Assembly (NCBI RefSeq): GCF_000150275.1
Contig: NW_002060949.1
Location: forward strand, 271,861-335,860
Length of the DNA stretch: 64,000 nt
Direction: 5' to 3'
Source of the DNA: Trichoplax adhaerens
Taxonomy: Eukaryota > Animalia > Placozoa
Part shown: positions 1 to 28,000 of the stretch, one piece after another
Position numbering within the stretch: the first letter of the stretch is position 1
How the letters are laid out: the number at the start of each line of letters is the position of its first letter
Made by a program: the position numbers and the translations under genes
Notes under the pieces: generated by a model
What the model saw: only the letters and a program-made list of their open reading frames with translations
Told to the model about the DNA's origin: nothing
Database searches by the model: none

Positions 1-3000
1 ACCATGGCAGTAACTTCGAAATGATATTGGGTGTACGGCTTCAGGTCTTCAATCATATAAGTTGTTTCACTAGCAGCAAGATCTGATATTACGTACTGTG
101 CTGACTTTGATTTGTTATCTTTCATCTTTTGACCAGTATATTTAATCTAGGAATGTAGTGGAATTTTAGTAAGCTACACAACATCCTTGAACTGTCATAT
201 ATCTTAAATGTACAATTACGCTGTAAAGTCTTAATTTTTCAATCAATACTTACAGTATATCCTATGATGTGTTTCTTCAATGATGAGATTACGCTCCAGT
301 TTAAAAATACGGAATTGCTTGTGACATTGTAAGCGATTACTGAACCCAACTGATCTCCATTAAATGAGATTGTAGTTTCAGTTGTCGTACTTGCTTTGGC
401 TAAAGAAGACAATCATAAAGACTTTTCATTAATTTTTAGTAGAATAGCATTTTAAATGTTACAAGGCATTTGCATACTATCTTAAATTGATAGTTTCTGG
501 ACATAATTAACTTAATTCTGTGGTGTATTTTATTGAAGAATGTTATAAATATAGAGAAATGGTAAATATCAGATGCTTGCATATAAAATATAGTAATTTC
601 TAGGATTAGGGACCGAGATTAGTTAATCTCTCATTCAATTTAAATTAGATTCATTTTCAAAGAAATTTAATCTATCATATGCAGCATTGTAGTACAGGAA
701 TAGAGTTTTGTGCAGATACAAAATTGACCATTTAGCTGACATTTAGTATTGACAAACAGCAAATGTTATAAAGTACAGTATTTGATGGGATAAAAATTCT
801 AAAATAATACCAAAATTACGTGTACTAATGAATTATCGATGACATTCTGCTGTATTTATCCTCCAAATACTACTAGATATGTAAAAATAATTGTTATATA
901 TCTCTATTAATGATCTATTAAACAAGATTTTAACTAAATTAATGGACTAATGAATTACCTGTCGCTGACGTTGCAGTAGTCTGAACTGTCGACGTACGAG
1001 TTGTAGATTTAGTCCCAATAAACGTACTAGTGGCTCTACTTGATGGAGTTGCTTCCTCTGCAGCATTTAAGTTACAAATTTAGCCAGTTAGTAAAATGAA
1101 GTGATACTTGATGAAGATCTAAGTTTTGATATTTCGTAGCTAGTCATAACATAATATAGATTCATTTTACTTACGAGGCTTCGTTGTTACTGTTATACTT
1201 GCTTCTTTACCAGTGCCAGCACTATTTTGAGCATTTATGCTAATTATATAGGTCGTATTTGGTACTAATAATGATAATACAGCCGTATTTAGAGCTTATG
1301 AAATGGCGTATTAATTACATATAAGATATTGATGAGACTTGAAAATGAAATAACTATGCTGAATAATAATCAGTACCGTAATCTTTCTTACTGCAAATAA
1401 TTATAGAAAATTGCGATAAATTTGGTTATACATGTATGTTTTTAAATTAAGTACGGTGCCTAAAAATTTAGTAATATCTTGTTATAAGCAAGTAAAATCG
1501 TATATTTTACTGTAATTGACAGTAATTTACGGATTAGAATTCTCCTAAACTATAGTATTAATTTATTCAGGTATACGACTAAGGAAAACTGATAGTATTT
1601 GTATAGTATGTGCCTTTATGTCGTCTTTAAATGAAGCATTAACAGTTTTAGCACTATATTATTGTTAAGGTGTGAAAACTATGTACGCTATATTTCATAA
1701 GATTTTAATTACTAACTAAGATTGAAAAAGCGAAAAAATGTTTGAAATCCGCTCAATCGGGTCACTCGGGCAATTTCATTCATTTGACGAATTGTCAGAT
1801 AGAAATTTGTCACTTCTTTAGCGTTAACGGTCCATTCGACATCGACTGTAGTACCGCTTAGCACTTTTGCAGTTATCTTTGGAGCCGAAGGAGCTGCAAG
1901 TACAATAAAGTAAATTTATATCTGCGAAAATTTTATTAGATATTGGACTAATGAGTATATTTATACTGAGTTGAGCTATGCAGACTGGATTATTGTGCTT
2001 AGTCTGCCATTGGTAGTAAAGGAGGAAATATTGTAAATATGATGTAGTATATCGAAAGTGCTTAAGTTATCGTATGAATTATCTAAATACAATACGAGTA
2101 TAAAATAAAGATAATTTTTAGCCAAAAGCTTACGAAGCGGTGCGGTTTTGATTTCGATTGTACTTGAAATGCCGTTTCCAGCTACATTAAATGGTATAAT
2201 GCTAATAACATAGGATCCTGAAGGCAGTAAATTCTTCACATAGCAGGTCTTTCCATATAAATGATTAAAATTTCATTTAGTGATACTTTGTTACAACTTA
2301 CTGGCTCATACACTCCTAGCAATCTGATATTACGGCTAGACAGTCCCATTACTTACATGCTGATTTTTAGCCAGGGTAAGCTCTCCTTCTTTGGTATCTA
2401 TTGCGCTCCTTTTATACCAGGTAACTGTATAACCATCAATAGACTGAGAACTAGATAATGTTGGTGGGTCCCATGAAATTTTTATCCACGTCGCATTTAA
2501 TTTATCTACGCGAATTTTGAACACGGCTGATGAAACTGTTGTGTTAAGAAAAAATTAAAAAAGATAATCTTCATTTAGTTTCTGATTTCTTCATTGCATA
2601 GGTAGGATATCACGGTATTTAGTATTTTACCTTCCGGGAAGGTTCTCACTGATATACTCCGACTTCGTTCACTGCGATAAAGAATATTTTCAACTTGAAG
2701 GCTGATTAAGTACTTTTTATTTGCCTTTAGCCCAGTATAAGTGTATTCGGTAATATTATAAGAAACCGTTTTGATGTCAAAATTAATATTATCCACTTTT
2801 TCTCGGATAAAAATTCTTATCGAACGTAACGGTCCGTTAAAGGTGTCAGGTGATGGTAGCTCCCACGAAATACGAATTGCATGTGGACTTATAACCGTTG
2901 CACTAATGCTAGTGGGTGGCTTGCTTGGCTCTATTGTCGCAATCAATATTTGAGGCACGTCAATGGAAAACTCAATGACGAACGTTAAAATTTACGATAC

Positions 3001-6000
3001 GTTACATGCAGCAAAGGCTATTGTGCAACATCTCTATTATTAATATATCAAATTTTCTATGGCTACGGCCCTAAACTTACTCTTAGGCGGGGTCTGGATG
3101 ATAATCACATTGCTCGATTGGCTCATCGACGTATTTGCTATCGCATAAATATATACAGTATAGTTACGGTAAGGTAGCAATGATCGCAGAACGAATGATT
3201 CCATTTTGGGAGTTTTAATAATTTTAGGTTTGTCGTAGGTATTGACGACAATCCCATATTGTTGAATAATGCTGATGCCATACTTTGGTTTTACCCAATT
3301 TAACTGTGCATCCCATTCTGAAATCATGGTAACGGTTAAATTCCTAGGATGGCTTGGTGCTATTTTCAGAAGAAAAATCAACGAAAGTTGAATGACAGCC
3401 AAAGTTAGATAATGTTCAAAAATTAGTTCTGTACGGATTGATAATTATATTTAATTAATTCTTAACAGGACTGTCTGTGTAATATAACTGCAGGTATACG
3501 TATATTAATTACAATTAGCAATAGTATTTTCGAGCATATTTAATCAAGTAGTTATTACTGCCCTTTGACGTCATTCTCACTTTTTGACAATTAAACAATC
3601 TATTTAATACATGTTGTATAGAATTATTAAGCAAGTAAAAAATTTAGATTTGAGATGAAATTCTCCAATTGAGACTTCCAAAGATCCGATATACTATCCT
3701 TACTCTAGATTTATATCCGCCATTAATCGCTAGGAAATCAAAAATAGCGTAAAAGAATTAATATGCCGAATTTACCTCCTTCTTGGACAGTAAAATTTGT
3801 TATTAAGGAGAAAGGTCCCTGTCCAGCTGAAGTTTTAGCCGCCATTGTTAACCAGTATGCAGTTCCATTTATTAAATTGGAGATAATCCTACTACCGAAT
3901 TCATCGTGATTAGAAACTTTAATGGTATTATTTGAACTTTGATCAGCTTCTCTAGCATATATGATGACATATTCCGTGATAATTCCATTGGGTTTTGATG
4001 GTGGATTCCACATTACTTCGACTGATTCATGATTTAAATTGTAAACCATCACATTTAACGGGGATGATGGTGCTGTCATAGAAATACAAATAATTGTTAT
4101 CCCAGTGATAAATTAAAATTACACACTGATATGAATTGGAAATGAATCAAGCATATCTAACTAAACTGATGTCTGTATTTGTGTAAAATAAATTCATGAA
4201 GCGGTTAAAATTGAGTTAAGATACGAAGAGTAATTATAATATGTGCGGTTGCTGAACTCTTATTTAACCTACCAGCTTCAGCAGTAGTTATCGTTAGGGT
4301 ATTGCTTGAATGGCTTTCCCCGTAATTATTTACAGAAGATAAATTAAATTGATAACGTGTAGCGGGTGATAGTTGGTCAACGAAAGTTTTTAATTCATCG
4401 TTATGGACAAAGATTACGGATGACCAGCGATCATTGTTCTTGGAGATATCCAATATCTTATAACGGAGAATATAACGATCAACCTTTTGATGGATATTTC
4501 CAGAAATCTGCGTAGACTGCAACTGCCAGCGTAGAATGAAATTTCTTGATGTGATATTTGTAGCTATTAAATTTTCAGGTGGGATTGGTAAATCTTATCA
4601 CATGAAATATAAATTACATATTAGAAGAATACAGCATCTTCTTAAAGGATGTATTTTGTTTAATATTCAGTGAAGCTAGTTTCAAATCTTCGTTCTTAAA
4701 TGATGATTGTATCTCTTACCTACAATGATAATCTTAAAATATCTGGTGTCTTGACCAAGTGAATTGGATGCTTTACAAGTGCATGTTATGTTAGATGTTA
4801 ACTTACGTAAAATAATTACTGGAGCACTTTCCAATGGATATGCACCAGTTGAATTTATGCATTTCCATTGTATACTAGGTGTTGGATAACCTTCAATGGT
4901 ACAATTTATTCTAATACTGTTTCCTCGAATCATAGTCAAATTTTTCGAAAATTCATTAATAGCGGGTGGTCGATCTCGTTCTATTATAGGGAATTTATAG
5001 AATTAGAATTACTTAAGTGTTTAATCCAGGAAATTTGTAATAGAGATTATCCTAAGTAATTACAATATTGTAGTACTAATTTCTGTTTCTCAAACTTACC
5101 TGTAACATGATAATAAACTCTCTTACTAAAATAGCTACCATGCTGATTTCGAGCTGCACATCCATAGGTTCCATCATCCGATGCTATAGCAGAATAAATT
5201 ATTAAACTACCATTTTTAGCTATAAAGATGCGTCCTTGGTGATCTAATATATTAATTTCCATGTAATTCTTTTCCCAAATAACTTTGGGATATGGATTTC
5301 CTATCGCATTGCAAATTATTTCCTTCCTGTTTCCAAGTATGAAGGGACGAGATCCAGTCTCCGGTCCAGATATAATATTAGGAAAACCCTCTGGTTTATT
5401 TTCAGCTGAAATCAATTGAATCGTAGAAATATTAATAAAAATAGGCCTCAATGTTGATTCATAATAAAATAATAAGTTACAATAAGACAATACTTTCGAT
5501 CTTGAACTACTAGCTAACATATTCATATGAAACTTTAAAAATGCAAACGTTTATATTTTTCGGGATTAATTATATCAACGTATATTCAATACAGTATGTT
5601 TACTTCAAATTCGCAGAGCATTCCATAAATAACTATTTACTGTATTATCGTCTTCATAGACGCAATATCTATATTCTAATATTTGAATATTAAAATGGCC
5701 TTGCCTGGAATAGCTATAATTTTTGCAACTGCCGTGGCAGGTTCACCAATGCCATTATCAGCAACACACGTATAATTCGCTGAACCTTGCTTAACTTCGA
5801 AAATTCGCAATTGTGATGGGCCATTAATAAAAGTTTCGGTCTTCTTATAGGGATCATCATCTCGAATTACACGATTATTAATTAGCCACGAATAAGATGG
5901 TGGTGGAGATCCATCAGCGTAGCATGAAATAAAAATACTGGATTTTACTTCTACGACTGTTGATTTTGGAGGACGCGTTATTTTCGGTGCTGAACCTATC

Positions 6001-9000
6001 ATGACAGCAACATAACATGATATAGTTAACGATAGTTTAATTTGATTATAATAGTTTATATCGAAGTCATTGTTAAACCGTTAGTAATTTCAGATTACAG
6101 TATTATCGATTATCATTCCTCAAGTTAGCTTAATCCATAAATTCTATCTATAGTTTTATAAGACTCTATCGGTGATGTACACAAAAATATCATGAAGAAC
6201 CGGTAGAGATGAAAGCTTTATGCGTCCATGTCAAGCGTAGTGAAGCTGAGCTATAGCATTTAAATCATCGCAAACACCACGCTTTACGAACACAAATTAT
6301 TTACTAGTCACCTTAGAGTTGCTGTTGTAAACTTACAGTATATCACATGAAGAAATTTAATTGTCGCGCAATTATGGCTTATATCAGTTTTGATTATTGC
6401 TTTTTTGTTGCTTAATCATGGTCTGCATTTATAATACAGCACTTAAATAATCTCATAAGTTTAGAATTAGAAAATTGATAGACTTAAGACCTCAAATCTT
6501 GCTTAAGAACGAGAAATGTAAGCGCCTTTCTTATAGCAATGAATCACAAGTCGAAAAAATATTTTAAGTCACCTTACTGTTATATACTGTATAATCTTTC
6601 AGGTTCAAGATTTCGTCTCCATCCTAACTTTAGATTTTAAACTGCTAGTAATTATTTTCTATGACAGAGTACCGTGTCATAATATTATGATAATATGAAC
6701 TAATCTCTTCGTAACAGTGCTGAATAAATGAACAAATGATTGATGTGTTTACTATCCGTAGTGGCATTATGGTACAAAGCATTACAAAATCTGCATATTT
6801 TTACGAGTGTTAAGAAGATATGAAGGAAACTAGATTAGATTATACTGTATCATATGCAAAAGAAAGGTTGATTGTATCTTGCAATGCTTAAATACGTCGA
6901 TACACACGATCTTAAACGAAAAAACTTATCTTTTTATGTCGTTTGTAAATAATGCTAAAGTATGATTCATATTAACATTTACAAGGGTGTAAATTATTGC
7001 AACTTAACATAAAAAATTTAACCCTAAAATTAGTAAGATTTAGTATAGTATTTTTAATACACGACAACATGTGTCGTTTTACGTAAAATTTAACGATGAC
7101 TTACTACCTCAAAACGTGTGGCAATTGCAAAATTAAACTACTATTAATTCAGCACATTACATATCAAATTCACTTTTTTCCACCGAAATAACAACCGTGC
7201 ATCTTTTATCACTCTCATTTATTTATGACAAATAAATTTGCAAGTTTATTTCTAATCAGTTGACAGGCTACTAAGCAGCAGCATAGCTAACGCACTATTT
7301 ATATAAACTACGGCAATGGACTATTATGAAGCTAAAACAAATACTATCGCATACAGTAGACTATATCATAAAATTTACTAATTTTCTTCCCTCAAGTAGT
7401 TTCTCTAACTGCAAATAATGAAATTAGACCTATTCTAATTAAGTGATTATAATATGTAAGCTAAAAAATTAGTATATGGTTTCGGGTAATTTTTATCTTC
7501 TTATACTATAAAATTGTTTTAGCAGTTTAAAATCAAATCGGTAAACGCAGCGTGAAGGTACCGGCCGTTATTATATTTTATCTCATGAGCTGGCTTTTCT
7601 TGGCACTATTTTTTTGAAGTGAAAATCGAAATAAAGACTACATATATAGTAAGAGAACAAATATCTACGTAGATACAAAATTCTTAGAATATTATAACAG
7701 TAAATATCGAAGTGGTTTTGACTGCGAATACATTCAGTGATAGCCTAATGGCCTATTTTGCTCATATATTGTGGCGAGATTAATTTTGAATTTAATGTTT
7801 GGGAGTCAGCGTTGTAAAAACTACAAGCTCAAATTTAGAGCTAATAAAATATTTTAATTATCACCAACATAGATTTACTTATCTAAGGAAAGCTGTGGGC
7901 TAAAAAGCTTGTTGTGTAATTTAAGTTTATTTCACGCTGTCACTATGTAGTAGGGTGGATATAATCAGTATATCAGTATGTCATAAGTAGTCTGATTATA
8001 AACTATGCGCAATGTTTCGTTAATCGAAGTCATGGATTTACCAGTCTGGAAAGCACTAAAAGCAATTTTTTTAACAAAAACGAAAAAGTTTGAACTTTAT
8101 ATTGTTAGATTAAGGTAATTCCTTATGGTAGGTGCAAAATTATTAAATTTTTTTGAAATTCATTTTAGCCGCAATTAACTTAAAATTGTAGTTATATCAG
8201 GATTTAATAGTAAAATTTTAAAGTTTTGGAAGATTTTATCAATAAAAGTAATATACTAGAATTAGAGTAAGTATGGTGCTCTCAGCTGTAGAATTAAAAA
8301 AATTCTTTATATTTACCCGAGCATGGAAATAAAAGCAATAATTTTGTATCTGGAACTGAATATTTGCAGTAAAAGGGTTTTGAACCTACGGTTTTTAATC
8401 CCTACCTTGAGCCGCTGCCGCCGCTGTGCAAGTTGTTAATAGGAATAGTAAAATCCATGCCATAGTTACGACATGAAGATTATTTTTCGGTTGGTTGGCT
8501 ATCATCACGATAAAAATTGTATGATTACCATTGCCTTATTATCGAATTCGTATTCTATTTTCCATCGAAATTATTTCCTATCTGCGTACAAGCTGAGAAC
8601 CAATTTGATTAAAAGTATTTTTAGTGACTTAACTATTAATTTGTATAACATAAATAGCCAGGTGGTGTTTCAAGCTGTTAAATTCAAGCTTATTGTATGT
8701 TACCAATGTGTCATTCCGGTATACTTTTGAATATTGATTAGTAATGTCTTGCCTACTTTAAGGCTATTACTAATTGATTACCATATTTAATATAAGGTTA
8801 GACAAATACGGTAACGATGCCTCAGTCATCAAATAGCATGAAAGATCTTTTATAGAAAAACATCATGATGGTAATGGTGACTAATGGTTTCTATGCTGTA
8901 ATCCTTATTGGATATTCCTATTGATCATTGCTGGGAGTATTTGTTGATTCTCTTGTCTAATTATTCACTCAGATTAACCGTAAATATTGTATTGTCAAAT

Positions 9001-10301
9001 GTGATCACTGATCGTTTGTGCAGATTAAATGTTCGTACAAGATTTATAACTTGGCATCGATAGGATTATTCTAAACTACAATATTTTTTCTACACCTACG
9101 CGATGTTAGAATATTTTCATTCTACATAAATATGAAGTAGACACATAATTTCGAAAATTGTTTTCATTTACTGATCAATTCTTTTAGCCTCAATGTCTTG
9201 CAAAAGTTGCTGTTAATTGTACTTTATGTTTTTAAGGCAATATTTGTAACTCTATACAAACAGTACAACCACATAATTACTAAGCAAAAAGGGGGCTATA
9301 CCTGTCAATCAAATGCTTTCAGCAAGAAATTAAATACAATCAGGCAATAAAGTGACTACGCGGTCCATTGGCGTTGGTATTGTAACAAAAGCTATTATGC
9401 CGTTTATTTGTTACAATTTAATTTGAATAATTAATGGAGATACAACAATTCTTGGCCCACTAAAATTGTCAACATTACATTATGCTATAGGCTACTTTCG
9501 ATGATATACAGTATATCAAACTGGGGCTAAATGACGTAGAAATCTACTCTATAGAACTAGGCAGTAAATATATAGCAGTTTGGGAAGTACTACATCGTCA
9601 TCAATTTCTTTCTTTGTTACAATATAGATGATGCATACTAGAAACAATAGCGTACATCTAAAAGGCTTGCTAAATTGACCGCACGTAATCATTCTGTTAA
9701 CTTTCATGTGTTATACTAATCACTATTAATTGAAATGTTTATTACGGTAGTCCTTCTTCGGTTACATTATATGCTACACTTTATTAATATGATAGTACTT
9801 TCCAGAATAATTCTGAATAATTCTGTTTTAATTAAAAATTTAAGATTAATTGGTAAACGCAGACACTTAACTGAAATTAGACTATTTTATATTACGTATT
9901 GAACCACGATTTCTTCTACTCAAAATGGGTGCTGCAATGTCTTTTTTACTTCAGTCAAGGATAGACTTGCTTTCAGAAATGGTTAAAATCAAATAATTAA
10001 AAAGGAAGATGAAGAAGCAGTATGCTCCTTCCGCATTTGAAAAGGCAAGGTGGAGCTGACAAAGACCTATGTACAAAACTTGTTTGCCTATAACGACAAA
10101 TGATGCCGCTAAAACCTAGATTAGAGCTTTGTTGCTGTACATCGATACTGTTATTAAAACAATTTTTATAACAATTAGATATGTACTGGTTCCTGACGGG
10201 CCGAAAAATTTCTTACAGGCAGTTACAAATAAAAGCGCGATTCTTAATGTGATGGTCGAAAGTATACTGTAGTCTTGACTAACAGTAAAATTTTTGACCA
10301 T
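1..10301 (-). CDS. LAR/type-IIa receptor protein tyrosine phosphatase-like gene, 5' part (signal peptide, Ig x3, FN3 x7+, Ser/Thr linker); continues beyond position 1
   Basis: Frame-compatible spliced exons: 10217-10301 (candidate signal peptide), 8406-8423 (microexon), 5705-5995 Ig1, 5100-5405 Ig2, 4720-4980 Ig3, FN3 exons 4273-4593, 3776-4072, 3081-3359, 2631-2930, 2357-2535+2134-2248, 1717-1893+1175-1264, S/T linker 959-1057, FN3 254-399+<1-146. The Ig1-Ig2 junction ENKPEGFPNIISGP resembles the LAR-family LPxGFPxIDMGP motif, and 3 Ig followed by FN3s is the type-IIa layout. No PTP domain lies in the window, so phosphatase status is inferred. The first two exons are less certain. Confidence 0.8.
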
Positions 10302-11644
10302 ATGGATTATTCTAAATTTTTACTTATAGTAGCCCGAAGTGAGAGCTTAAAAACGGTGTGGAGAATAAATATCACGCTGTTTTCTATTATAGTTATGCAA
10401 AGCGATGTTCTTCAGGATACACAATGAACTTTTATAGCATATTCTATTTTCTATAAGTTAATCAAATAACGTGGTAATGATTTCTTGGAATCCTTAGATT
10501 GCGCATATGATTAATAAATTGCTTTTCGTTCACAAGATTATGTTGTGTGTTATCCTATATTCACTTGTATAGTATTATTACAATCTACAAACCAGAGCTG
10601 GGAGGTTAAAATTAGGACAATACACATATCAATAGCAATTTAGATATGATGTAACCAAAACATTTGTCAATGTCTTTGTTAAACTTATTAGCTATATCTC
10701 TATTAACTTCTGCTAGCCTTATAACTAGCTATTTTTCTCTATGTATAGCTATTTAAAATCTTTACCGATTATAAGCAGACTATTTGTAAAAGAGTATGCA
10801 ACAATGAATTGAAGCCTAATTCTTGTTATGAAATCTACATCGAACGATACAAAGCTGCATCGCGAACTTTCAATCTGCTGTTTTCCGATTGGATATTAAT
10901 TTACAGATAGTTACGATATAACATTTGCTGATGATGATAATAATAGCAAGGTAACGTCGTTATTAGAGTCAACTATATTTGCTTAAATAGAAATAATTAA
11001 AAATTAAAAAAATTTTAATCAGCTTTATTAATATATTAAGTAGGCACTTGAGTAATAGCAGATATAGTAGTTCCAAATTTGTTAAAATATTAAAAGTAAG
11101 TCAGCATATTGTAGTTTGTTCATGTTAAATAATAAGAAGCTATAATTAATATTGCATAAATAGTGTTTGCCATATTTTGGAGAAACAATGGTTAATACTG
11201 ATATTAACTTAACAGGAGCACGGCCTATGGGCTTGTACTACTTCTTAAATTGATAGGATTTAATAAAATGCTTTAAATAAAGCACTCAAATGATTTTTCG
11301 GTCATTTGATTAAAAAAATAATTTAAATAATTATCACTTGAACATGTTATAGCATCTGCGTATGTGCTTTTTATGTACTTAAGATAAAAAACCGCGCCGA
11401 TTAAGTTACTGTAGTAACAGTATATGGAAAGCGCGGTATATTACCAACGATTTTGTATAAAGCAAGACGCGATTGGAGTTTTTGATCTGGGAATGTTCAG
11501 TTCGCTCCCTATGTACATTTGCCACTTTTTTTTAATTTTACATGCTACGATGGCCCTTTTATATGGTTGATCAATAGTTCAGAGGATTTAAATAAGTAAG
11601 AAGAAATAATATTCCGCTATGATCTTTTGATACAACAATTTCCA

Positions 11645-14600
11645 TTAAATCCAAAAGCTGCTTCGGTCGTGTTGTGATAGTTGGCGTCTCATTTGATATA
11701 ATGAAATAGAATCACGAACATCATCTTTAACTTGGTATTGATATTTTAAGCTATCGGTTTCTTCTTGTTCGTCTGCATGCGTTTGAACGTAGAATAGTTG
11801 TATTAGTAATAAATTTTATCACTTCTATTTTAATTAGAGTAATGTATAATTTAACCACACTCAGACTGAACGGAAAACATCAATCGTCGACGTTAACATT
11901 TCATTAATTAAATTTTGCTCATATTTATGCTGACTAACCGTTGCCAATATCGATGTGTGAACAGCTATGACACATACTGTCGTCATAATCTAGTCCAACA
12001 TAACCTGATTCATGATCTTGATCGAAAGTGTTACTGGGAATCTGGCAAGTTTTATTATATGAGGCAATTTATTAATAATGTCAGCAAACGATTCAGCATA
12101 AGAGGATTATTAAAAAAACTTCTCAGAAAATAATATAATTGGTGTACTGAATTTAAATTAAGCCCTGTGAAATTCTTTAACTGCAATTGATTCGCACGCT
12201 AGTTGCAAGGATTTATTAAGTCATTTCGCTTGCAATTCTTACCTTTTCGTCAGTTGGATATTTACAAGTTATGATGCGCAATTGAGGTTCGGAATCTTGT
12301 GAAGGCTTTTCTTGGGACGATTCTCGAGTTTGATCAATCGATATTGAGTTAGGATAATGAACCGAACAATTATGAGGACGCAATTGTGCTTCATTATTGC
12401 CCTATATCATATTAATTAACAGAAAATTACTGTAATATCTGTGATAACAGATAGGACTATTAAATCCTTCTGATTCTATGATGGCGACTGCGTACGATAA
12501 TTCTTCAAAGAACTGAATTATTTTTCGTTACAGCAATAGTTTTTACCATATCAGATTCGATATTGCAGCTATTGGCTGGCTTATTTTCAGTTTTAGGGTT
12601 TCTGATCGTATTCTCGAACAATGTCTTATTAGTTTTGTCGTTCTTGTCCTCCGTTTTAGTATAGTCTGATTGGATATTAGCTTTAACTGTTAAACAATTT
12701 TAAAAGTCCATTTGCAGAAAGAAAACTATGCATCAGAACCTTATTCCCAACAAGCATGCTATATGACAATTCAATAATGTGGTTGATATCAAATAAGACT
12801 AACCTGGATATTTAACTATGGTTTTCAAATTTCTCTGCGAAGATGTTTTGTTATGAATGCGCCGAACAGCGACAGGATGCTTATTCTTGTAGAATTTTCT
12901 GGAAACAATAGCAAAGATTTTTGGAAATTTATTTATAATTATGATACTTTCTGTCACGTAGACAGAGTTCATTCTTAGGTGAATTGTTAGAATTTAATTG
13001 TCCATTAAACTAGGATAAGCAAATTTTGACTGAGATTGATTTCATTCCTAAAATGTTATGAATTTGAGTTGCATCTTACCTGACTATAACCGCGACGAGA
13101 ACTATCAATACAACTGTTAGAAGGGCACTTCCAGCTATAATGATTATTGGAAGTGAAATTATGACCTGAAGTTCAAGTTCCAGACTATCCTCGATACCTA
13201 AGTTCAATATAGATCCATTAATTCTTATTCATTAGAACCGGAATTTAGCTGATAGTTCTGGTAAGTATGAATTCGTATTGAAAAATAGCAAGATGTAAGC
13301 ATAATTCTAATCGCTAAGTGTAGTTACCTGGCAACTGTACCATATGACTGGACGTATAAAGTAACGAATCCTATATTATATAGAAATAAAATAACATTAG
13401 GAGCTAAAAGATAATGATATCTAGTAATTACTTCGATGATAATTGTGGATGACTGCATAATTTAGAAATTACTAGCTACAATAATTATCAAAAAATATTC
13501 ATGTACTACATCAGAACTTACTTTGACTTGATTTGTTTTTACATAAGCTCTTAGTATTGCTGCATATTTTATATTAGATAACAAAGGACGATTGTAGATA
13601 CTATTTGACGTCGTATTATCGCCAATAGTAAAATTTATTGGTAGTTCTTGAGGCGAAAATCTTGCTGTTACATATGCTGGCAGGTCGATGTGGCGAAACT
13701 GAATGCCCAGGAGTCGATTTAAAAACTGAGGATTTAAATCCTCGAGATTATAGACTGGCAATAATTTTTTATCACGGCCAACTACAATCAATTTTATGAT
13801 AATTAAATCATAGTAGCTAGGAAAAAGTTAAGCATAAAATTGTTAACATAAATTCGATACCTTTTCAGTGAGCTCAATTTATCATGTTGAAAATGGTTGA
13901 GTAATTTTTGAATTCGCAATAACAAGTTATTGTACTAGAGTTACCTAATTGGACCATAAGCTTCCGAAACTTTAGGTATTTGCACTAGTACCTGATACGA
14001 TTGATTCTGATTCGGTAAGAACTTTAATTTCAAAACATGAATTTTTTCTACAGCAACCGGCGCTAAATAAGCGGTATGTCGGCGTTAATGTAAAAAATAC
14101 GGTAACTTACGGAAGCTTCTTGAAGTAATTTCTTGACATAAATCACTTATCAATTGAAATATATTTACCCAATTTTTCGGTAGTAAACTGGATATCGCTT
14201 TGTAGTATCCTACTGTCATTCATGATTACAGCAATGTGACCGTGATAAGTAGTAAAAGGCAGCAATTTGGTAATTCTGCAGGAGGTTATGTTAACCATGA
14301 GAAGTTTGCGAATTGATTGCTTGCGTAAATTACTGTTTGCATCTTTACTAGATGCTGCCAACGAAATCTATAAATTAAAGCGGCAAGTTACAGGTAAAAT
14401 ATGCTCAATAAATATTTTACAATTTATCTGCTATATATTATATTGCATTAATTAATATACAGTCCTACCTCATAATGATCAAATTTGCTTCCTGAAGATA
14501 GATTTGGATATCTCCAATTCAAGATTATAGAATTTGGCATAATGTTATCGATGCTAAGGTTAAATTGGTTATATGCTGCAATATTCACAAAAAATATATT

Positions 14601-16732
14601 AAGTATCTATACAATTTTCGTTCAAAGATACTATTACTTTACATTGATCCATACTTTCGAAAATTGCACAAAACAAGGTATGTAATAGCTATAACTTACT
14701 CGCTTGATCATCGCTGTTTTTAGCTATGGTTGTCGAACGTTGAGACTGTTTCGTTGGCAGTAATGCAGTAGTTGTAGTAGTAGCGGTTTTAATGCTTGTT
14801 GCTTTAATGTTTTGTTTTTCTACAGTGGATATTTGCCATTGATGTTGATATTTAATCTCTAAAATGTGATGTAGCTATGAGCTGAAATATTCACAATACC
14901 TATCGGATTAATTGGAGTAGTTTCCTTGTTAGAAGTTGATACATTGATAAAAACTTCTTGACTTGCTGACTTTCCCCATCCCGCACTTGTTTTAGCAGCT
15001 AGTTTTATCGTATACTTGCCACTTTTACCTGTAATCATACGATATGATCAGGATGCTATTTGTAAGTTAGCGTAAATGTTTAGCATCAATGCTACCTTAC
15101 CAAATTCAAATATTCCCTGTTAAAGAATTAGACATTCACAACTATCGTGTGCAGTACGTGTTATACTTACCTAGACTTGAAAAGTAATGGAACTTAAAAT
15201 CTGGCGGCAAGTGGTAAACATTTCCTGTATTGTTGTACAGGATGGAAATTTGATATTTTGTTACGGTATCTACATGAACATTTTTAGGCGATTGCCAGCG
15301 GACAATAATACTTGATTGGCCATATACTTCTAGTGTCATATTGGGTTTACCTGGAACTATAACGATTAATACTTTTACTACTGGGATGTTAGAGAATAGA
15401 ATTTACAAGATTTCGCATATTAAATTCCATGTTTAACGTACTCAAACTTGCTGTGGTACCCACAATTGTTAAGCGTGGATTATCAGCAGTTGCATTTAAT
15501 GATGTTACGTGAATCAGATAGCTGGAACTTGCTTTTAAATTGGAAATAAGGTATTTCTAAAAAATTTTAAAATTCGTCGAAATGAATATTTTTTTTCAAT
15601 TTCATTATTATTGTATAGCTTCTTGATGAAAATAAGAACAGCTAATGCTTTACTTAGTTATACTTTAGAGCTGCTACTTTATGAGATAATCTTTGTTCTA
15701 CCTGGATTTTCTTTACTTTAACTTCTCCTATTTTCATTAAATTTGAGACTAAATACCATTCAATTCTGTAAATAGATTGCTTGCTTGTTGATGGATTATT
15801 AAAAAACTTCCATCTAATTTCCATAGATGTTCTATTTTTGAATGATATCCTAATATTTTTCATGTTTTGGGTTCGTTCTGTAATGATTTTCATACATTTC
15901 GTATACAGTTAGGCATTATATAATGCAATTTGACAGCAACTGCATGGCATGCAGTACGAAGTGAAAACAACAATACAGAGCGGTTAGTAGGACAATTAGT
16001 CCATCTATTCATACCTTGAGATGGCATTTTAGTAGTCACCTTAACCGTTAGTTTACGACGAAGTGCAAAATCGTAGGCTATTACCGAAATAGTATATTTG
16101 GTGCGGGGCTTGAGACTAGTGACAACATAGCTTCTCTTGGATCCCGGCAACACTGTATTTCTAGCAGACGACGAATGTGATTGGCGAATCATAATTATAA
16201 ATTTTGCAATTTTGTACTTTGCTTCTTTAGTTATATTTAACCGCCATTCTAAGATAACTGTCGTTGAATTGATAATTTTAGTTTCCGTTATTTTCAACAT
16301 TGCCCCTGTCATTACAGAAATCATTATTATCATTAGTGATTAAAGTTGTGTTGGCTGTAAGTATATAACACCAGACGTTAATACATCTGTCCAACATAAA
16401 AATTTCAATAACATCTTTGAAATTAGCTAAAATCGTCATAAGAAGACATTTTTTATGTACTGTTTATGTAGATAAAATATATAACCATAAAGTTTAATAA
16501 TATAACTCTATTTCAATTTTGTCTTTACGGCTACACGTATATGGAATTCAAATATACTGTATGAATTTCAGTAGTCCAAATGAATTAAATTTTTACAGGT
16601 ACTTTTCACTTAAACATTACTTAGAAATATTCATATCAAAATTTATTCCTCACCTTTTCTAATATCGATATCGTTGGGCACCACCATAACGAATAAGCAC
16701 GACAACAGAGTTAAAAGTAGGTATCGATTCAT
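11645..16732 (-). CDS. Phosphatase-less LAR-like type-I membrane protein (signal peptide, FN3 x3, S/T linker, FN3, LAR membrane-proximal domain, TM, ~207-aa cytoplasmic tail); ~879 aa, 18 exons
   Basis: Exons 16654-16732 (MNRYLLLTLLSCLFVMVV...), 16015-16305, 15702-15877, 15442-15556, 15171-15356, 14900-15028, 14700-14858, 14469-14575, 14169-14367, 13945-14062, 13522-13816 (AYVTARFSPQELPINFTIGD...YNRPL, RPTP juxtamembrane-domain motif), 13328-13370, 13080-13197 (TM VIISLPIIIIAGSALLTVVLIVLVAVIV), 12804-12898, 12547-12686, 12243-12401, 11939-12041, 11645-11772 (ends ...SSFWI*). All introns are GT-AG and phase-compatible; total 2640 nt. Confidence 0.8.
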
Positions 16733-22013: not shown

Positions 22014-25000
22014 ATGAATTCATTTCTTTCGTATTTGCTGCTATTGCTAACTGTAAGAGATGAGAATAATATTTTTCTGATCCTGTTGTAGTGATGCTAC
22101 CTGTAAAATAGAAATAACTTTCAAAGTTTGAATGCGATTTTTAGTGCTAGTCAAAAATTTCACTCTAGCAAAGCTATAATGTAATGACTAAAGTAGTAAA
22201 AAAATCTAATCTATTTAATCCGTAAATCATTTTAAACTCTTCCTGTTACTTTAGAGTATCATAGCCGTTTGATATGATTGAGAACACTTCAGAAAAAGTT
22301 ATATTAGTTTCTGATCTAATTTTACTGTAATATTGGGAATTATGATAATCGTTGTACAGTAATGAATTTAAATAGCAAAATGTTTGTTAGTTTAGAAAGA
22401 AATACATGAACAGAAATTTTTGATTGTTAACTTGTTAAAAATTCTCATTAGAAGCGATTAACTTTAATTTTTGAAAAATTTTTATTCTGTCAGCAAATGT
22501 AACTAGCAAAGGATCACTTACAAAATATAGTAACAGTTGCAGTAAATGCCGCTAGTTTAATGATTGCAGATGAAGTGCTCCTGTTAGTTACTAATTTAAT
22601 ACTTTGTTTCTTCAACAATTCTGATTATATAATTACTATACCTATGTTATAATTGATAATAGATAATAAATATATTAGGGGCTCTAAATGAACAATTTAA
22701 AAATGGTAAGTCGTTCAGTTCTACGGTTTCTGCTATAAATTTGTAAGGATTTTTCAGGTCCGAATAGCTAACTGCATGTGAAAGTGAAGATTTAAGCATG
22801 ATATTTAGTACTATAGCAAATTGATTCGTTCCTTTAATATACTTGATTACTATCCTACGCAGTTACAAGCATCATTATAGAAACTTTCTTTTCGCATTTT
22901 AGGCGATCTAAAAGTATGTCAACGTAATAGATGCGATGCTGGATTGTGTTATTTAAAAGGTCGTACTGAGATATGTGTATGCTACGATGGATATTTCGGA
23001 GATCGATGTCAGCATGGTAAGTGAAATAGATTTAAGCTTAAACTATTGTAAATTTCTTGTTCGGCAAGTGTAGCTAGATGTTTCTGATAACTTACCATTA
23101 AATCTGTTATTTATTGCATAAACTCTCTAGCGGTTCCTTATCCATTAAATCCTTGCCACAGTAATCCATGCCATTATGGGAAATGTATTTCATATCGCTT
23201 TCGTGATACTCTACTAAACAAGCTTGTATCATCTTATTTATGCCAATGCAATGAAACTACGATCAATTCTGAATGTCACAATGGTAAATTACTATACTTT
23301 CACCGTGGCTGTTTCTATACTTATTCAAATCTTATTGCTGGCAAATGATATTGTCTACGGGTACACAGAAAGAAGAGTTTAAAGTCCTACCTAAACTAGA
23401 TTTAATAATCAGACACATCCACAATGTTGTTTTTAGGAAATAGAGGGATGCAGCTATCACGAATTAATATGATCATAGCTGAAGAGCACTAAGTACCGTA
23501 ATGGCTGCAGCAACTCAGATATGATCAGTAATTAATTGGGTTTTGTACTTATGGAATAGAAGTTACTTGTTGAGTGCAACTATAAGGCTGAACATACTGC
23601 AATATATCTGGTACATCATAGCAGTAAAGAGTAGTAGCAAATAATTGTAGTCGTTTATAAAGTACAGTACCCCTTTTAATACTGATTATAATTATCGATT
23701 TTCGCATGAAAGCAGTTTTTGCGAATTCGGTATGTTACTTACCTACAATTGATCACACCCCTATTATTAAATCAGGGATTTTTGTCGGAAGTCCTTGATC
23801 AAATATTATTTGGTTTAAATAATAGATCAAAAGCAAACGATTTTGTACTGTTAATAATAACTACAGTAGCCGCTGATAACATAATTAATACTAATTTAAA
23901 ACCTTTAGTACAAATTTAAATTCTAGGTTAATCAGCTAAGAATCTTTCATAATAGATACGATTCTTTAAAATATTAATATTCTAGCTGTCCGATCCTACC
24001 GTCACGTATAATTATATTCGTATATGCAATAATCACAATTTCTTAAAAACTTATCTTAATCTTGAAGATAGTGTTAAATTTAGAAGTTCGACATATCTAT
24101 TTTTTTCGTGAGATATTTAATACACTGGCAGATTGCTAAAGCTTCGTATTTTATTTCATGGTCATAGTTACTCGCTGCTTCCAACCCTGTGCAAGTAACC
24201 CTTGTGTAAATGGTATTTGCACGGTTAGTAATAATAAAAATGGCTTTAATTGCCTTTGTAAGAGTCGATGGACGGGTAAAGCTTGCGAAATTGAAGGTAA
24301 ATGACATAGAAAATTTTTTTTAATTTCTTGGTTTACTAAGAGCGACTGTTCTAGTAAATCTGAAAGTATTACAGGAAAGTAGTTTCTAGACTAGGTTTGA
24401 TAAACAAAATGTATAGAATAATGATTTAATTTATCCTGCCTATCTCTTTCAGGCAATGAGTAGATTTAGACTGTTCACTACTATACTAGATACTAGTCAT
24501 TGTAAGATTACATATCAAATGGAAAGGGATTGTGCAATTTTAATTATACATTAATTTGTGAAGATATATAATACGATAGTAATTGCATAATTCAGTCCTT
24601 TATATCGTAAATGAATGTTAACAAAATAACTAGATATCTGAAAAATCTTCTGAATACAATACTTCAGAACTCACTACTTTATAGAATAAATAAATTTACT
24701 TATAACAGAAAAAATAAAATCGTAAATTACTTATGTCACTGGACCGTTGAGAAAATTGGTCTCCTACAAACGACGTTCTTGAAGATACGATCTTCAGTAA
24801 TTGATAGGGATTGTATTCTAAAAGAAGTATTAAAGGGACCTTTTACTACTTAGGCACATTTATAAATGATAATGCATAGATTTTCGTAATACAGGTATCT
24901 AAGGATCGAAAGGCGTGCTCTTTACTCTAGCTATAATTGTAATTTTGCACGTTGAAGTTTCTTTGCAAATGACAATGCCGATAATATAAAGAAAACAAAC

Positions 25001-28000
25001 TACTTTAGGCGAGTGTATGGTCAGTTACCAAGTTAAAGTATTATACAAGTATGCGAAGTATCACGAGCAGAGTGTTCGATCAGTAAATATGATTTAGAGA
25101 TAGATAATGCAGATTTTGCCTCATTATATAGTATAGCTTACAATTTAAATCAAATAAGCTAGACTACAGATAATTGCATTTATTAAATTGTAATTTGAAG
25201 ATTCGAAAAGTAAATTAGATTATTTATTGCTATAAAATTTAAACTGTTCAACCGTTTTGTGGCGTTGTACTTATTTACTTATAAATGACAATATCCGTCA
25301 TAGGATAATTTACAAGACTATCCTAATTTTATTAGTAAAGAATCCTTGTGCTTCCAATCCTTGCTTATACAATGGGATATGCTCAGTTAGAAATGAATCA
25401 ACGGATTATGTTTGCTCTTGCAGAAATTCTTATACTGGACGAAATTGCGATACAGGTGGTAACTCTTTCTTTAATACCAGATCTAAGCAGATCATGATGT
25501 AATTAATTTAGTTTAGATTAATACTCGGACAATTGTAATCTAGAATAGCGTCATGCAATGGTAAATTTAATATTAATCGTTATTTCCTTTTTAACAGAAG
25601 TAACTTGGGCAGGATGCTTATCGAACCCATGTCCAAACAATGCTACTTGCGTATTAAGTAATTATGCCTATTCGTGCATATGCCCTCCTTTATACTACGG
25701 CAATAATTGCCAGCATGGTAATAAGTGCATTAACCTACTTAATGTATAAGAATTATTAGCTCAAACAAATATTTGCGTAGCTGCAAGAAAAGATGCAATC
25801 GACATTCTGTTGGAGGCTTTATACTACGTCATTTAAAATAAATTTCATAGTGTTGCTGCTTAAGTTAACGTTTCTAAATTAAATCTATGCTTAGGTCCCG
25901 TTAAAACTGGAGAAATTCAGTTATCAGGAATATATCATGGCATCCCTCTGGTTTATTTTAATAATACTTGGGGCTCGATCTGTTTAGAAACAAAATTTCA
26001 TCTGGATAAATTCTTTATTTCCAATGTGATATGCATGCAGCTTGGTTACAGAGGAGCTATCACATCGTTTCACTCTTCCCCAAATTTCGACATATCGCCA
26101 ATTTTACTTGTTTACCGCTGTTTTCAGAAATCTATGTCCATTGGTCAATGTAATACAAGAGATTTTGGAGACGTTTCTTCATGCTTACCATCAGACACAC
26201 TGAATATTATTTGCGATCGTAGTAGGACACAAAAAAATGCAACTTACTAACATATAATTTAATAAACCTTTATGGCTTTAATTTCTACAGTAGTATAACT
26301 TATCATGAGAGACTAAACAACTGTTTTTTATCTTAAATAGGGGACATAAACTGCAAAGAATCAGATCAACGTATCTGCAGCTTGACAAATCACAAATGTC
26401 GAAAAGATGTGCGCGGTGTAACTTGTATTTGTGCACAGGATTATACAGGGAAATTATGTGAAGTTAAAATAGGTAAAGTTAAACTTTAACCTGTAAGCAG
26501 TATCTGGGTTTGCTTTCATTTAAACGCATCTCTTTCTGTATATGATCTTATACGTTTGTTGTGAAACTGTACCACATAATCCCTATAAAACTAAATTTAA
26601 TTCTTTTACACTAATAGTGTGATTGTTGAAAGCTAAATCTAGTTTAAAGATTGCGTAAATTTGTTATTTAAACAGGATGCAATCTGGGATAGATTTATAA
26701 ATTCCTTTTAACTTTCTATCTTGTTACTCTGTATTTTCGTCGCGTGCTTAGCTATAGCTCACCATTGCTAGCTTACAACTTACTGTAAAATAAATATTTA
26801 ATACTAGTTTTAAATACATCATATGCTTATATGTCTATTATAATTAAAGTTGAACCAGCCGAAGGAGCTATTCGATTGAAAGATGAGAATGCAGGTTCTA
26901 ACTTTAAAACAGTGGAGATTTATCACCATGGATTTTGGGGTGGCATCTATGCCAATACAACCAATTTGCCCGAAGCTACCGTTATATGCAGACAACTAGG
27001 CTACAAATTTGTTACTTGGTATTCATGTTGTCCAACTAATTGTAACATGAAAATATGGGTTAATGGATTGCATTGCTTGGGAAATGAAAGCAAGTTAGCC
27101 GACTGCCAAGTAAAATATGGAGCAAGCAAATCTGTAGATAGCCGATTTCTACTAAAAATAAATTGTCAAGGTGTGATTTTACAATTACACTTTAAAAATT
27201 TTCGCTGAGCGAAATGTAATGTAATTAATAATACTGGAAATCAAGTATAAACTGTAAAATTAGTTTATTACAAATGCTATCTATCTATGCATGTTACTAA
27301 ATACACCTACTGTATTCATTTATGAGATGAAGAAGTAATATATATATTTATTTTTTAGCGATGTGAGTTCATGTAGGTAACTACGTAATTCACTACTGTG
27401 TAGTTTATGTACTTTCAGTAGGGTTTATTTACTTGTCACAAATAGAGCCTAATAATATGAGAGGATTACTATTACTTAATTCAAAAATCGCCGCTGTAAA
27501 TTTATTCGTCTTCTGCTCATCCTAACTATTTCAGAAGTATTTATTGCTGCGGTATGATTGCAAAGCGATACTGCATAAATTATATCTCAGATCGAGTTTC
27601 CATAGGGCAGTGAGATTATTATAAGTATACTTCTATCATCTACCTATCGCGTTGTTGTCAGATAGTAATTTGTTACCCTTCGAGAGGTAAAATTAACTGG
27701 CATCCATTGAATTAATCTAACTAGGCTCAAGTTGAAAAATAAAAAGTGATTAAAGTGATGTTTTTAATTTTATTCTTTAGATAATATTTGTCACAAGGCC
27801 TGTGCAAATGGAACATGTATAAAGTCATCCATAAAAATCGGCAATATTAATTTTCAAAAGCCAGAGTGCCAGTGCTTCCCAGGTTACTTTGGAAATCGCT
27901 GCCAATTTTTTAATCACTGCCAGAATTTACCGTGCTCAAATAATGGAACTTGTGAAGTTGTCGGGTTTGAATATAGATGCCATTGCAGGCCAGAGTATTA

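What the first reader, a model, noticed from the sequence alone, without database searches (positions are those of the whole stretch)
11645..16732. Phosphatase-less LAR paralog in tandem with a LAR-type RPTP gene: candidate decoy/adaptor receptor pair
Seen: a complete 18-exon ORF with signal peptide, 4 FN3, S/T stalk, the RPTP membrane-proximal domain (YGPISYY..IIV; AYVTARF..ELP..FTIGD...YNRPL) and a TM helix. It then has a ~207-aa low-complexity tail and a stop, with no HCxxGxxR or other PTP motif. Only ~1.3 kb separates the stop from the candidate start of the downstream LAR-like gene, too little room for tandem PTP domains. Known: type-IIa RPTPs normally carry D1-D2 phosphatase domains and are regulated through ectodomain interactions. 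Inference: a gene-encoded, catalytically empty RPTP next to its parent could act as a ligand decoy, dominant negative, or Tyr-phosphorylated scaffold.
Basis: partly seen in the sequence, partly recalled or inferred. Interest (0 to 1): 0.8.

Follow-up and report, generated by a model that had tools for sequence, protein, structure and literature searches.

The report
Phosphatase-less LAR-derived receptor in Trichoplax
Next to the LAR receptor-phosphatase gene of the simple animal Trichoplax lies a real, conserved gene that copies LAR's membrane-near outer part and membrane anchor exon for exon but ends in a unique floppy tail instead of the enzyme. The gene is already annotated, it has not been studied, and its role is untested.

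Summary
Window 16732-11645 (minus strand) is an 18-exon, all GT-AG, 866-codon gene. It is Trichoplax adhaerens TRIADDRAFT_57808 (XP_002114227.1), and Trichoplax sp. H2 has a 99% identical 866-aa model with the same stop.

It encodes a signal peptide, four FN3 domains with a Ser/Thr stalk, an RPTP-type membrane-proximal FN3-like domain, one TM helix and a 207-aa polar tail. No PTP domain or motif occurs in the protein or in any frame up to the next gene.

That next gene is a true LAR type (3 Ig, FN3s, D1-D2), starting about 3.2 kb downstream rather than 1.3 kb.

Six consecutive introns, from the last FN3 to the TM/juxtamembrane boundary, share position and phase in the two genes. Exon lengths nearly match (199/202, 118/118, 295/298, 43/52, 118/118), so this is an old partial tandem duplicate.

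Against a distant placozoan contig, pN is 0.22 and pS 0.71 (omega about 0.1). The first tail exon and its splice sites are conserved there.

It is therefore neither a pseudogene nor a model artefact. The functional readings (decoy, dominant negative, scaffold) are untested. Lack of the Ig module argues against a decoy for Ig-binding ligands.

The scan's other notes on this gene cover the same stretch, not other DNA.

The parts
11645..16732 (-). Whole coding span of TRIADDRAFT_57808: 18 exons, 866 codons plus stop
   Evidence: Model built; public models P0002 and P0009
16654..16732 (-). Exon 1: ATG and signal peptide (hydrophobic core at residues 4-17)
   Evidence: present in the H2 model, missing from the JGI H1 model
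16015..16305 (-). Exon 2: FN3 domain 1 (single exon)
   Evidence: Pfam fn3 E 5e-8 on the exon alone
15442..15877 (-). Exons 3-4 (15877-15702, 15556-15442): FN3 domain 2
   Evidence: matches PTPdelta FN1-3
14900..15356 (-). Exons 5-6 (15356-15171, 15028-14900): FN3 domain 3
   Evidence: conserved in L014 at 62-69% aa identity
14700..14819 (-). Exon 7: Ser/Thr-rich stalk
   Evidence: Translation; gene 1 has a Ser/Thr stretch at the matching place
14169..14575 (-). Exons 8-9 (14575-14469, 14367-14169): FN3 domain 4
   Evidence: Best Pfam fn3 stretch, residues 371-449; same intron phase 0 inside the domain as gene 1
13328..14062 (-). Exons 10-12 (14062-13945, 13816-13522, 13370-13328): RPTP-type membrane-proximal FN3-like domain and a 43-nt micro-exon
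   Evidence: Fn3_PTPRU sub-threshold; PTPmu FN3-4 E 3.5e-7 and PTPdelta last FN; invariant Y..A.F...P..F..G...N.PL motif; exon 11 omega 0.04
13080..13197 (-). Exon 13: transmembrane helix, ends in phase 2
   Evidence: Hydropathy; helix 635-665 in the otherwise poor AF2 model; same length (118 nt) and phases as gene 1's TM exon
11645..12898 (-). Exons 14-18 (12898-12804, 12686-12547, 12401-12243, 12041-11939, 11772-11645): 207-aa polar cytoplasmic tail and stop. No PTP domain.
   Evidence: Exon 14 is conserved with its splice sites in L014. Exon GC is 0.34-0.40 against 0.29-0.31 in introns, and codon score is +0.22 against -0.47 bits. No paralog in the genome.
11531..11536 (-). ATTAAA, a possible polyadenylation signal 109 nt after the stop
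   Evidence: pattern match only
8464..11644 (-). Intergenic stretch between the stop and the LAR gene's start; no PTP-like coding in any frame
1..8463 (-). 5' part of the neighbouring LAR-type RPTP gene (signal peptide, 3 Ig, FN3 repeats). It continues left of the window to D1-D2 at C1408:265528-268948.

Best explanation
Shown:
- This is a real, intact gene (TRIADDRAFT_57808) for a type I membrane glycoprotein.
- Its parts are a signal peptide, four FN3 domains with a Ser/Thr stalk, the FN3-like membrane-proximal domain otherwise found in receptor tyrosine phosphatases, one TM helix and a 207-residue polar tail.
- It has no phosphatase domain.
- The part from the stalk and last FN3 through the TM exon is an old partial tandem duplicate of the adjacent LAR-type RPTP gene.
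- Five unrelated exons stand where LAR has its juxtamembrane and D1-D2 exons.
- The gene has been kept under purifying selection since before deep placozoan lineages split.

Inferred (mechanism, low confidence):
- The protein sits at the cell surface and cannot dephosphorylate anything.
- It most likely acts through the module it kept most strictly, the membrane-proximal domain plus TM. That module would let it associate side by side with LAR or with whatever binds LAR's membrane-near region.
- It would then couple to cytoplasmic partners through short motifs in a disordered tail: an acidic Tyr cluster SGYVGLDYDD and a C-terminal F-W-I that fits a class II PDZ ligand.
- So it is an adaptor or co-receptor rather than a decoy for Ig-binding ligands.
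For: - Gene model: 18 exons, all GT-AG, one frame.
- The same protein, tail and stop appear in the evidence-based H2 annotation (method in PMC6057997).
- Domains.
- No PTP anywhere in the window, whereas the neighbour has D1-D2.
- Paralogy: introns in phases 0, 1, 2, 0, 1, 2 at the same alignment positions. Exon lengths are 199/202, 118/118, 295/298, 43/52 and 118/118. Identity is 32% over 293 positions, z 15.8 against shuffles.
- Gene 1 is the only other hit to this protein in the whole genome.
- Selection: against contig L014, pS 0.71 and pN 0.22. Exon 11 has omega 0.04. Exon 14 has omega about 0.3 with conserved AG/GT sites.
- Tail exons look coding by GC content and codon use.
- FN-domain homophilic binding in LAR has a precedent (LARFN5C, PMC13486334).
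Against: - I saw no transcript directly. Support for exons 15-18 is indirect: the H2 model, composition, and an open frame across GT-AG sites.
- I could not retrieve tail exons 15-18 from any distant placozoan, so their conservation is unknown.
- H1 and H2 differ by only 0.5-1% everywhere, so that comparison cannot tell.
- The motifs named in the tail are short patterns that occur by chance.
- No binding test was run.
- The three N-terminal FN3 domains are not clearly collinear with gene 1.
Confidence: 0.6

Rival explanations
1. Neofunctionalised adhesion or receptor protein. It descends from LAR but now works on its own, with its own FN3-binding partners and its own tail signalling, and has no functional link to LAR.
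For: - Identity to gene 1 is only about 32%.
- The N-terminal FN3s are not collinear with gene 1.
- The tail is unique in the genome and in the databases searched.
- The synonymous-saturated divergence from L014 shows long independent evolution.
Against: - The most constrained exon is the one shared with LAR, the membrane-proximal domain (omega 0.04).
- Tandem position and orientation are kept in H1 and H2.
- None of this excludes independence.
Confidence: 0.25
2. Ligand decoy or dominant negative: the ectodomain soaks up LAR ligands, or pairs with LAR to silence it.
For: - RPTP-like ectodomain without a catalytic domain.
- The gene lies next to its parent.
- LAR FN-domain fragments bind LAR homophilically (PMC13486334).
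Against: - No Ig domains are present or encoded nearby.
- In LAR-RPTPs the proteoglycan ligands bind Ig1 (PMC13486334).
- A 207-aa tail with a conserved first exon is more than a pure decoy needs.
Confidence: 0.1
3. Gene-model artefact or complex locus. The real mRNA joins the TM exon to the LAR gene's cytoplasmic exons, and exons 14-18 are spurious or a minor alternative end.
For: - Exon 13 ends in phase 2. LAR's first cytoplasmic exon starts in phase 2, so such a join would be in frame.
- I saw no RNA reads.
Against: - The join would need a 14-kb intron that skips the entire LAR ectodomain.
- The evidence-based H2 annotation keeps two genes.
- Exon 14 and its splice sites are conserved in a distant placozoan.
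- The tail exons look coding.
- No chimeric protein turned up among 1.84 billion representatives.
Confidence: 0.04
4. A decaying duplicate (pseudogene) that merely still has an open frame.
For: Loss of the catalytic part; low similarity to the parent gene.
Against: - An open frame across 18 exons in 31% GC DNA, with all splice sites canonical.
- Omega about 0.1 at saturated synonymous divergence.
- Orthologue present in H2 and in a distant placozoan.
Confidence: 0.02

Closest known systems
Type IIa (LAR) receptor tyrosine phosphatases: Lar, PTPRF, PTPRD, PTPRS, and the neighbouring Trichoplax LAR gene
   Same: - FN3 repeats, with best solved-structure matches to PTPdelta FN1-3 (E 3e-13).
- The membrane-proximal FN3-like domain with the Y..A.F / F..GD / N.PL motif.
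- A single TM helix.
- Six intron positions and phases shared with the adjacent LAR gene.
   Different: - No Ig1-3.
- No wedge or juxtamembrane region and no D1-D2.
- A unique 207-aa tail instead.
- Only about 32% identity to the neighbour.
Type IIb RPTPs (PTPmu/PTPRM, PTPRU) FN4; Pfam Fn3_PTPRU, and the related PTP_tm of R3 RPTPs
   Same: - Residues 380-602 align to PTPmu FN3-FN4 (E 3.5e-7).
- Exon 11 is the best Fn3_PTPRU hit in the whole Trichoplax genome.
   Different: - The score is below Pfam's gathering cut-off.
- No MAM or Ig domain and no phosphatase.
- The long database proteins with this domain that I examined (P0003, P0004) both carry a PTP domain.
Catalytic-domain-less relatives of receptor enzymes (BAMBI for TGF-beta type I receptors, truncated TrkB.T1). 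From my own knowledge, not tested here.
   Same: A receptor-like ectodomain and TM without the catalytic domain. Like BAMBI, it is encoded by its own gene.
   Different: - Those proteins keep the ligand-binding part of the parent receptor. This one lacks LAR's Ig ligand-binding module.
- It has a long tail of its own.
Non-catalytic or N-terminally truncated LAR products: the LARFN5C ectodomain fragment (PMC13486334) and the rat liver LAR isoform from an intron-11 promoter (PMC2674045)
   Same: - They show that pieces of the LAR FN region can act alone. LARFN5C binds LAR FN domains.
- They show that Ig-less LAR forms exist.
   Different: - Those are fragments or isoforms of the LAR gene itself.
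- The liver isoform is described only as a truncated LAR transcript from an intronic promoter with a proposed 150 kDa product. That it keeps the phosphatase part is my reading, not checked.
- Here a separate gene has fixed the phosphatase-less state.

Membership tests
Type IIa (LAR) RPTP | Three N-terminal Ig domains (ligand-binding module) | tested here: not met
   No Ig family in Pfam on P0009. No Ig-like exon between 9 and 24 kb by tblastn with gene 1's Ig exons.
Type IIa (LAR) RPTP | Several FN3 domains | tested here: met
   Four fn3 stretches, E 3e-28. PTPdelta, PTPsigma and PTPmu are 5 of the 26 solved-structure matches, including the top five.
Type IIa (LAR) RPTP | RPTP-type membrane-proximal FN3-like domain followed by one TM helix | tested here: met
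   PTPmu FN3-4 E 3.5e-7 and PTPdelta last FN domain. Motif invariant across 7 sequences. Pfam Fn3_PTPRU only 21.2 of 24.7 bits. TM helix.
Type IIa (LAR) RPTP | Cytoplasmic tandem PTP domains D1-D2 with HCxxGxxR | tested here: not met
   No PF00102 hit in the protein or anywhere in the window. No tblastn match to gene 1's PTP exons. No signature motif in any frame from 8.3 to 13.2 kb.
Type IIa (LAR) RPTP | Common descent with a LAR gene (shared gene structure) | tested here: met
   Six introns with the same position and phase and near-identical exon lengths; alignment z 15.8.
RPTP pseudophosphatases (PTPRN/IA-2, PTPRU type) | Keeps a PTP fold with disabled catalytic residues | tested here: not met
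   No PTP-like sequence at all. The tail has no look-alike.
Decoy or pseudoreceptor (BAMBI-like) | Lacks the catalytic domain of its parent receptor and is encoded by its own gene | tested here: met
   separate gene in the H2 annotation.
Decoy or pseudoreceptor (BAMBI-like) | Keeps the parent receptor's ligand-binding ectodomain | tested here: not met
   The Ig module is absent. Only the membrane-near half is shared.
Decoy or pseudoreceptor (BAMBI-like) | Binds the parent receptor or its ligand and damps signalling | not testable with these tools
This needs a bench test.

The most novel reading that the evidence does not exclude
A dedicated, gene-encoded regulatory partner of LAR, conserved across Placozoa. 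It would pair with LAR in cis through the duplicated membrane-proximal/TM module and set LAR's clustering or dimerisation state, while its own tail recruits adaptors. That would be a BAMBI-like 'pseudo-receptor' for a receptor phosphatase, in an animal without synapses.
Probability: 0.12. Interest if true: 0.7.

Novelty: new variant of a known kind. Interest (0 to 1): 0.4.

Why it matters
LAR-type phosphatases organise cell contacts and synapses, and part of their action does not need catalysis. This is a separate gene that has kept only LAR's membrane-near ectodomain and anchor for a very long time, in an animal with no nervous system. That makes it a natural experiment on what this part of the receptor does by itself. 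It could also show how receptor families give rise to non-catalytic partners.

At present it is one lineage-specific gene that is already in the databases, misnamed 'Tyrosine-protein phosphatase Lar' in one of them. It has no expression or binding data, so its weight is moderate.

Tried and rejected
- Word search with tail exon 16: no candidate.
- ESM Atlas look-alikes of the tail: no usable feature hit, and all structure matches had TM-score at or below 0.30.
- Two metagenome scans, one with P0009 and one with an exon-11 alignment, to find longer placozoan contigs carrying the tail: none confirmed.
- H1 against H2 DNA: 0.5-1% divergence in exons, introns and intergenic DNA alike, so it has no power for a selection test.
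- AlphaFold2 on P0009 without an alignment: mean pLDDT 32, useless apart from the signal-peptide and TM helices. No fold search was run on it.
- PF18861 (PTP_tm) scan of the genome: nothing rang anywhere, so it is uninformative.
- Literature look-ups by gene, protein and UniProt identifiers: no paper. Term searches for phosphatase-less LAR relatives found no description.
- The single-cell atlas paper (PMC10580291) does not mention the gene in its main text.
- Rejected as a pseudogene (omega about 0.1).
- Rejected the idea of hidden PTP exons before the next gene.
- Complex prediction with LAR was not sent, because gene 1's spliced domain has no reference here.
- My joined H1 model was used only inside scripts for coordinates, phases, hydropathy and alignment, and was not sent to any search or fold tool. 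Whole-protein searches used the public records P0002 and P0009. My own searches of the window went exon by exon, by reference.
- The contig is placozoan, not human.
Full report
**Identity of the sequence.** The window is G000:C1408:271861-335860 of a 105.6-Mb, 31% GC assembly. A protein search with exon 11 returned a 100% identical 807-aa record, XP_002114227.1 / TRIADDRAFT_57808 / B3S1F2 of Trichoplax adhaerens. The contig is therefore placozoan, not human. Earlier notes of this scan had suggested Trichoplax, and one search confirms it.

**The observation.**
- Stop-free stretches on the minus strand can be chained into 18 exons, from 16732-16654 to 11772-11645. Every intron is GT-AG and there is one frame of 866 codons.
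- The Trichoplax sp. H2 protein P0009 (866 aa) has the same structure and the same C-terminus, and differs at 9 residues.
- The older JGI H1 model lacks the signal peptide and 44 residues of the third FN3.
- H2 models come from an evidence-based MAKER run fed with Trinity and Cufflinks transcripts (PMC6057997). I could not see the evidence for this particular gene.
- Hydropathy shows a signal-peptide core and one TM segment at about 636-658.
- Pfam finds four fn3 stretches (E 3e-28), a sub-threshold Fn3_PTPRU match at 552-597, and no Y_phosphatase. Exon-by-exon scans agree, and the tail exons hit nothing.
- Among solved structures the best matches are PTPdelta FN1-3 (E 3e-13) and PTPmu FN3-FN4 (E 3.5e-7). 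A second PTPdelta stretch aligns the last FN domain, with its YIAAHF ... FTLGD motif, to residues 478-599.
- The motif Y..A.F...P..F..G...N.PL is invariant in seven sequences from placozoans and other animals.

**No phosphatase.**
- A six-frame PF00102 scan of the whole assembly gives 47 matches. None lies inside the window.
- tblastn with every open frame of the LAR gene's cytoplasmic region finds nothing between the TM exon and the next gene.
- No HCxxGxxR, Cx5R or WPD occurs in the model, and no PTP signature occurs in any frame from 8.3 to 13.2 kb.
- The neighbouring gene is a full LAR type. Its signal peptide starts at about 8463, followed by three Ig exons and a run of FN3 exons in the window. 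D1 and D2, with WPD, VHCSAGIGRTG and the D2 counterparts, lie at C1408:265528-268948. H2 annotates it with Ig, fn3 and two Y_phosphatase domains.
- The gap between the two genes is about 3.2 kb, not 1.3 kb.

**Origin.** Reading both genes side by side and rebuilding gene 1's last six ectodomain/TM exons shows the following:
- Intron phases are 0, 1, 2, 0, 1, 2 at the same alignment positions in both genes.
- Exon lengths are 199/202, 118/118, 295/298, 43/52 and 118/118.
- Both genes have a Ser/Thr stretch before the last FN3.
- Identity is 32% over 293 positions, z 15.8 against shuffles.
- Gene 1 is the only other place in the genome that matches this protein.
- This confirms the sibling note s1-747332 for the part from the stalk and fourth FN3 onward.
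- The three N-terminal FN3s match gene 1 only weakly and out of order.
- Exons 14-18 have no similarity to gene 1 or to anything else in the genome.

**Is it functional?**
- A word search with exon 11 found a 79% identical open frame on a 2.9-kb Logan contig, L014 from SRR30664516. L014 is collinear with exons 4-14.
- Over 429 aligned codons, pS is 0.71 (saturated) and pN is 0.22, giving omega about 0.1. Exon 11 is the most constrained, at 0.04.
- The TM exon of L014 ends AG|GT in phase 2. Exon 14 is present with conserved acceptor and donor sites, 45% identity and a kept RIHNKT core.
- A placozoan metagenome contig, L017, carries the LAR counterpart. Both paralogs are therefore old.
- H1 against H2 DNA is too similar to be informative.
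- For exons 15-18 I have only indirect support: higher GC than the flanking introns, coding-like codon use (+0.22 against -0.47 +/- 0.23 bits per codon), canonical splice sites, an ATTAAA 109 nt after the stop, and the H2 model.

**Mechanism.**
- What is shown is the architecture and the history.
- What is inferred is that the protein acts at the surface without catalysis. It would work through the strictly kept membrane-proximal/TM module, possibly beside LAR, and through a disordered tail. That tail is polar (mean KD -1.26), carries ten tyrosines including the acidic cluster SGYVGLDYDD, and ends in F-W-I.
- LAR FN-domain fragments bind LAR FN domains, and proteoglycan ligands bind Ig1 (PMC13486334). 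The first point makes a cis or homophilic link plausible. The second makes an Ig-ligand decoy implausible, because the Ig module is missing.
- I rate the identity and origin at about 0.9, and the specific mechanism at 0.2-0.3.

**Comparison and novelty.**
- It fails membership of the LAR family as an enzyme: no Ig and no D1-D2. It clearly descends from that family.
- It is not a pseudophosphatase, because it has no PTP fold.
- It only partly fits the pseudoreceptor pattern.
- The two long database proteins with this membrane-proximal domain, P0003 and P0004, both carry a PTP domain. Exon 11 is the best Fn3_PTPRU hit in the whole Trichoplax genome.
- No paper in the searched library mentions the gene or such a paralog.
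- The gene is already in the databases, once under the misleading name 'Tyrosine-protein phosphatase Lar'. I rate it a new variant of a known kind, with interest 0.4.

**Method notes.**
- My own searches of the window went exon by exon, by reference. Whole-protein searches used the public ids P0002 and P0009.
- The joined H1 model stayed inside scripts and was not searched or folded.
- A complex prediction with LAR was left out because gene 1's spliced domain has no reference.
- The single-sequence AlphaFold model was too poor to use.

Noticed in passing
L013, about window -1202 (C1408 near 270,658), minus strand: The LAR gene's TM exon in T. adhaerens appears to end CAG|GCGAGG. That is a GC donor in phase 2, with no in-frame GT before the stop. 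The metagenomic placozoan contig L017 has AG|GTAAGA at the same place.
   Followed up: partly
window 8391-8540, minus strand: The LAR gene's likely start is ATG at about 8463, encoding a signal peptide and followed by the donor CAAG|GTAGGG. The first Ig exon follows after a 2.3-kb intron. The H2 annotation splits this 5' part into a separate 108-aa 'I-set' gene.
   Followed up: partly
window about 22,500-42,000, plus strand: A giant SRCR/Ig/EGF gene (3003 aa in the H2 annotation) is transcribed divergently from the finding. Many single-exon SRCR domains are visible.
   Followed up: no
window 54263-55744, plus strand: A single 493-aa open frame with a Core-2/I-branching glycosyltransferase domain (PF02485, E 8e-46).
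   Followed up: no
C1408:345267-347547 (+) and C1408:421018-423268 (+), outside the window: Two more sets of PTP-domain exons lie on the same scaffold, 9 kb and 85 kb beyond the window's right end. This scaffold therefore holds a loose cluster of receptor-phosphatase genes.
   Followed up: no
P0009 (Trichoplax sp. H2 record): The source names this phosphatase-less protein 'Tyrosine-protein phosphatase Lar', probably by best-hit name transfer. The JGI H1 model (P0002) lacks the signal peptide and 44 residues of FN3-3.
   Followed up: yes
P0003 and P0004 (database proteins): Other animals have receptor phosphatases that repeat the membrane-proximal module many times. P0003 has 4 Fn3_PTPRU stretches alongside 3 fn3 stretches. 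P0004 has 14 PTP_tm repeats in 3320 aa with one PTP domain.
   Followed up: partly
P0005 and P0008 compared with window 13522-13816 and L013:8725-9021: Two short non-placozoan sequences carry a basic RKRR/RRRR stretch just before the Y..A.F motif, like the furin site of bilaterian LARs. Neither placozoan paralog has one.
   Followed up: no
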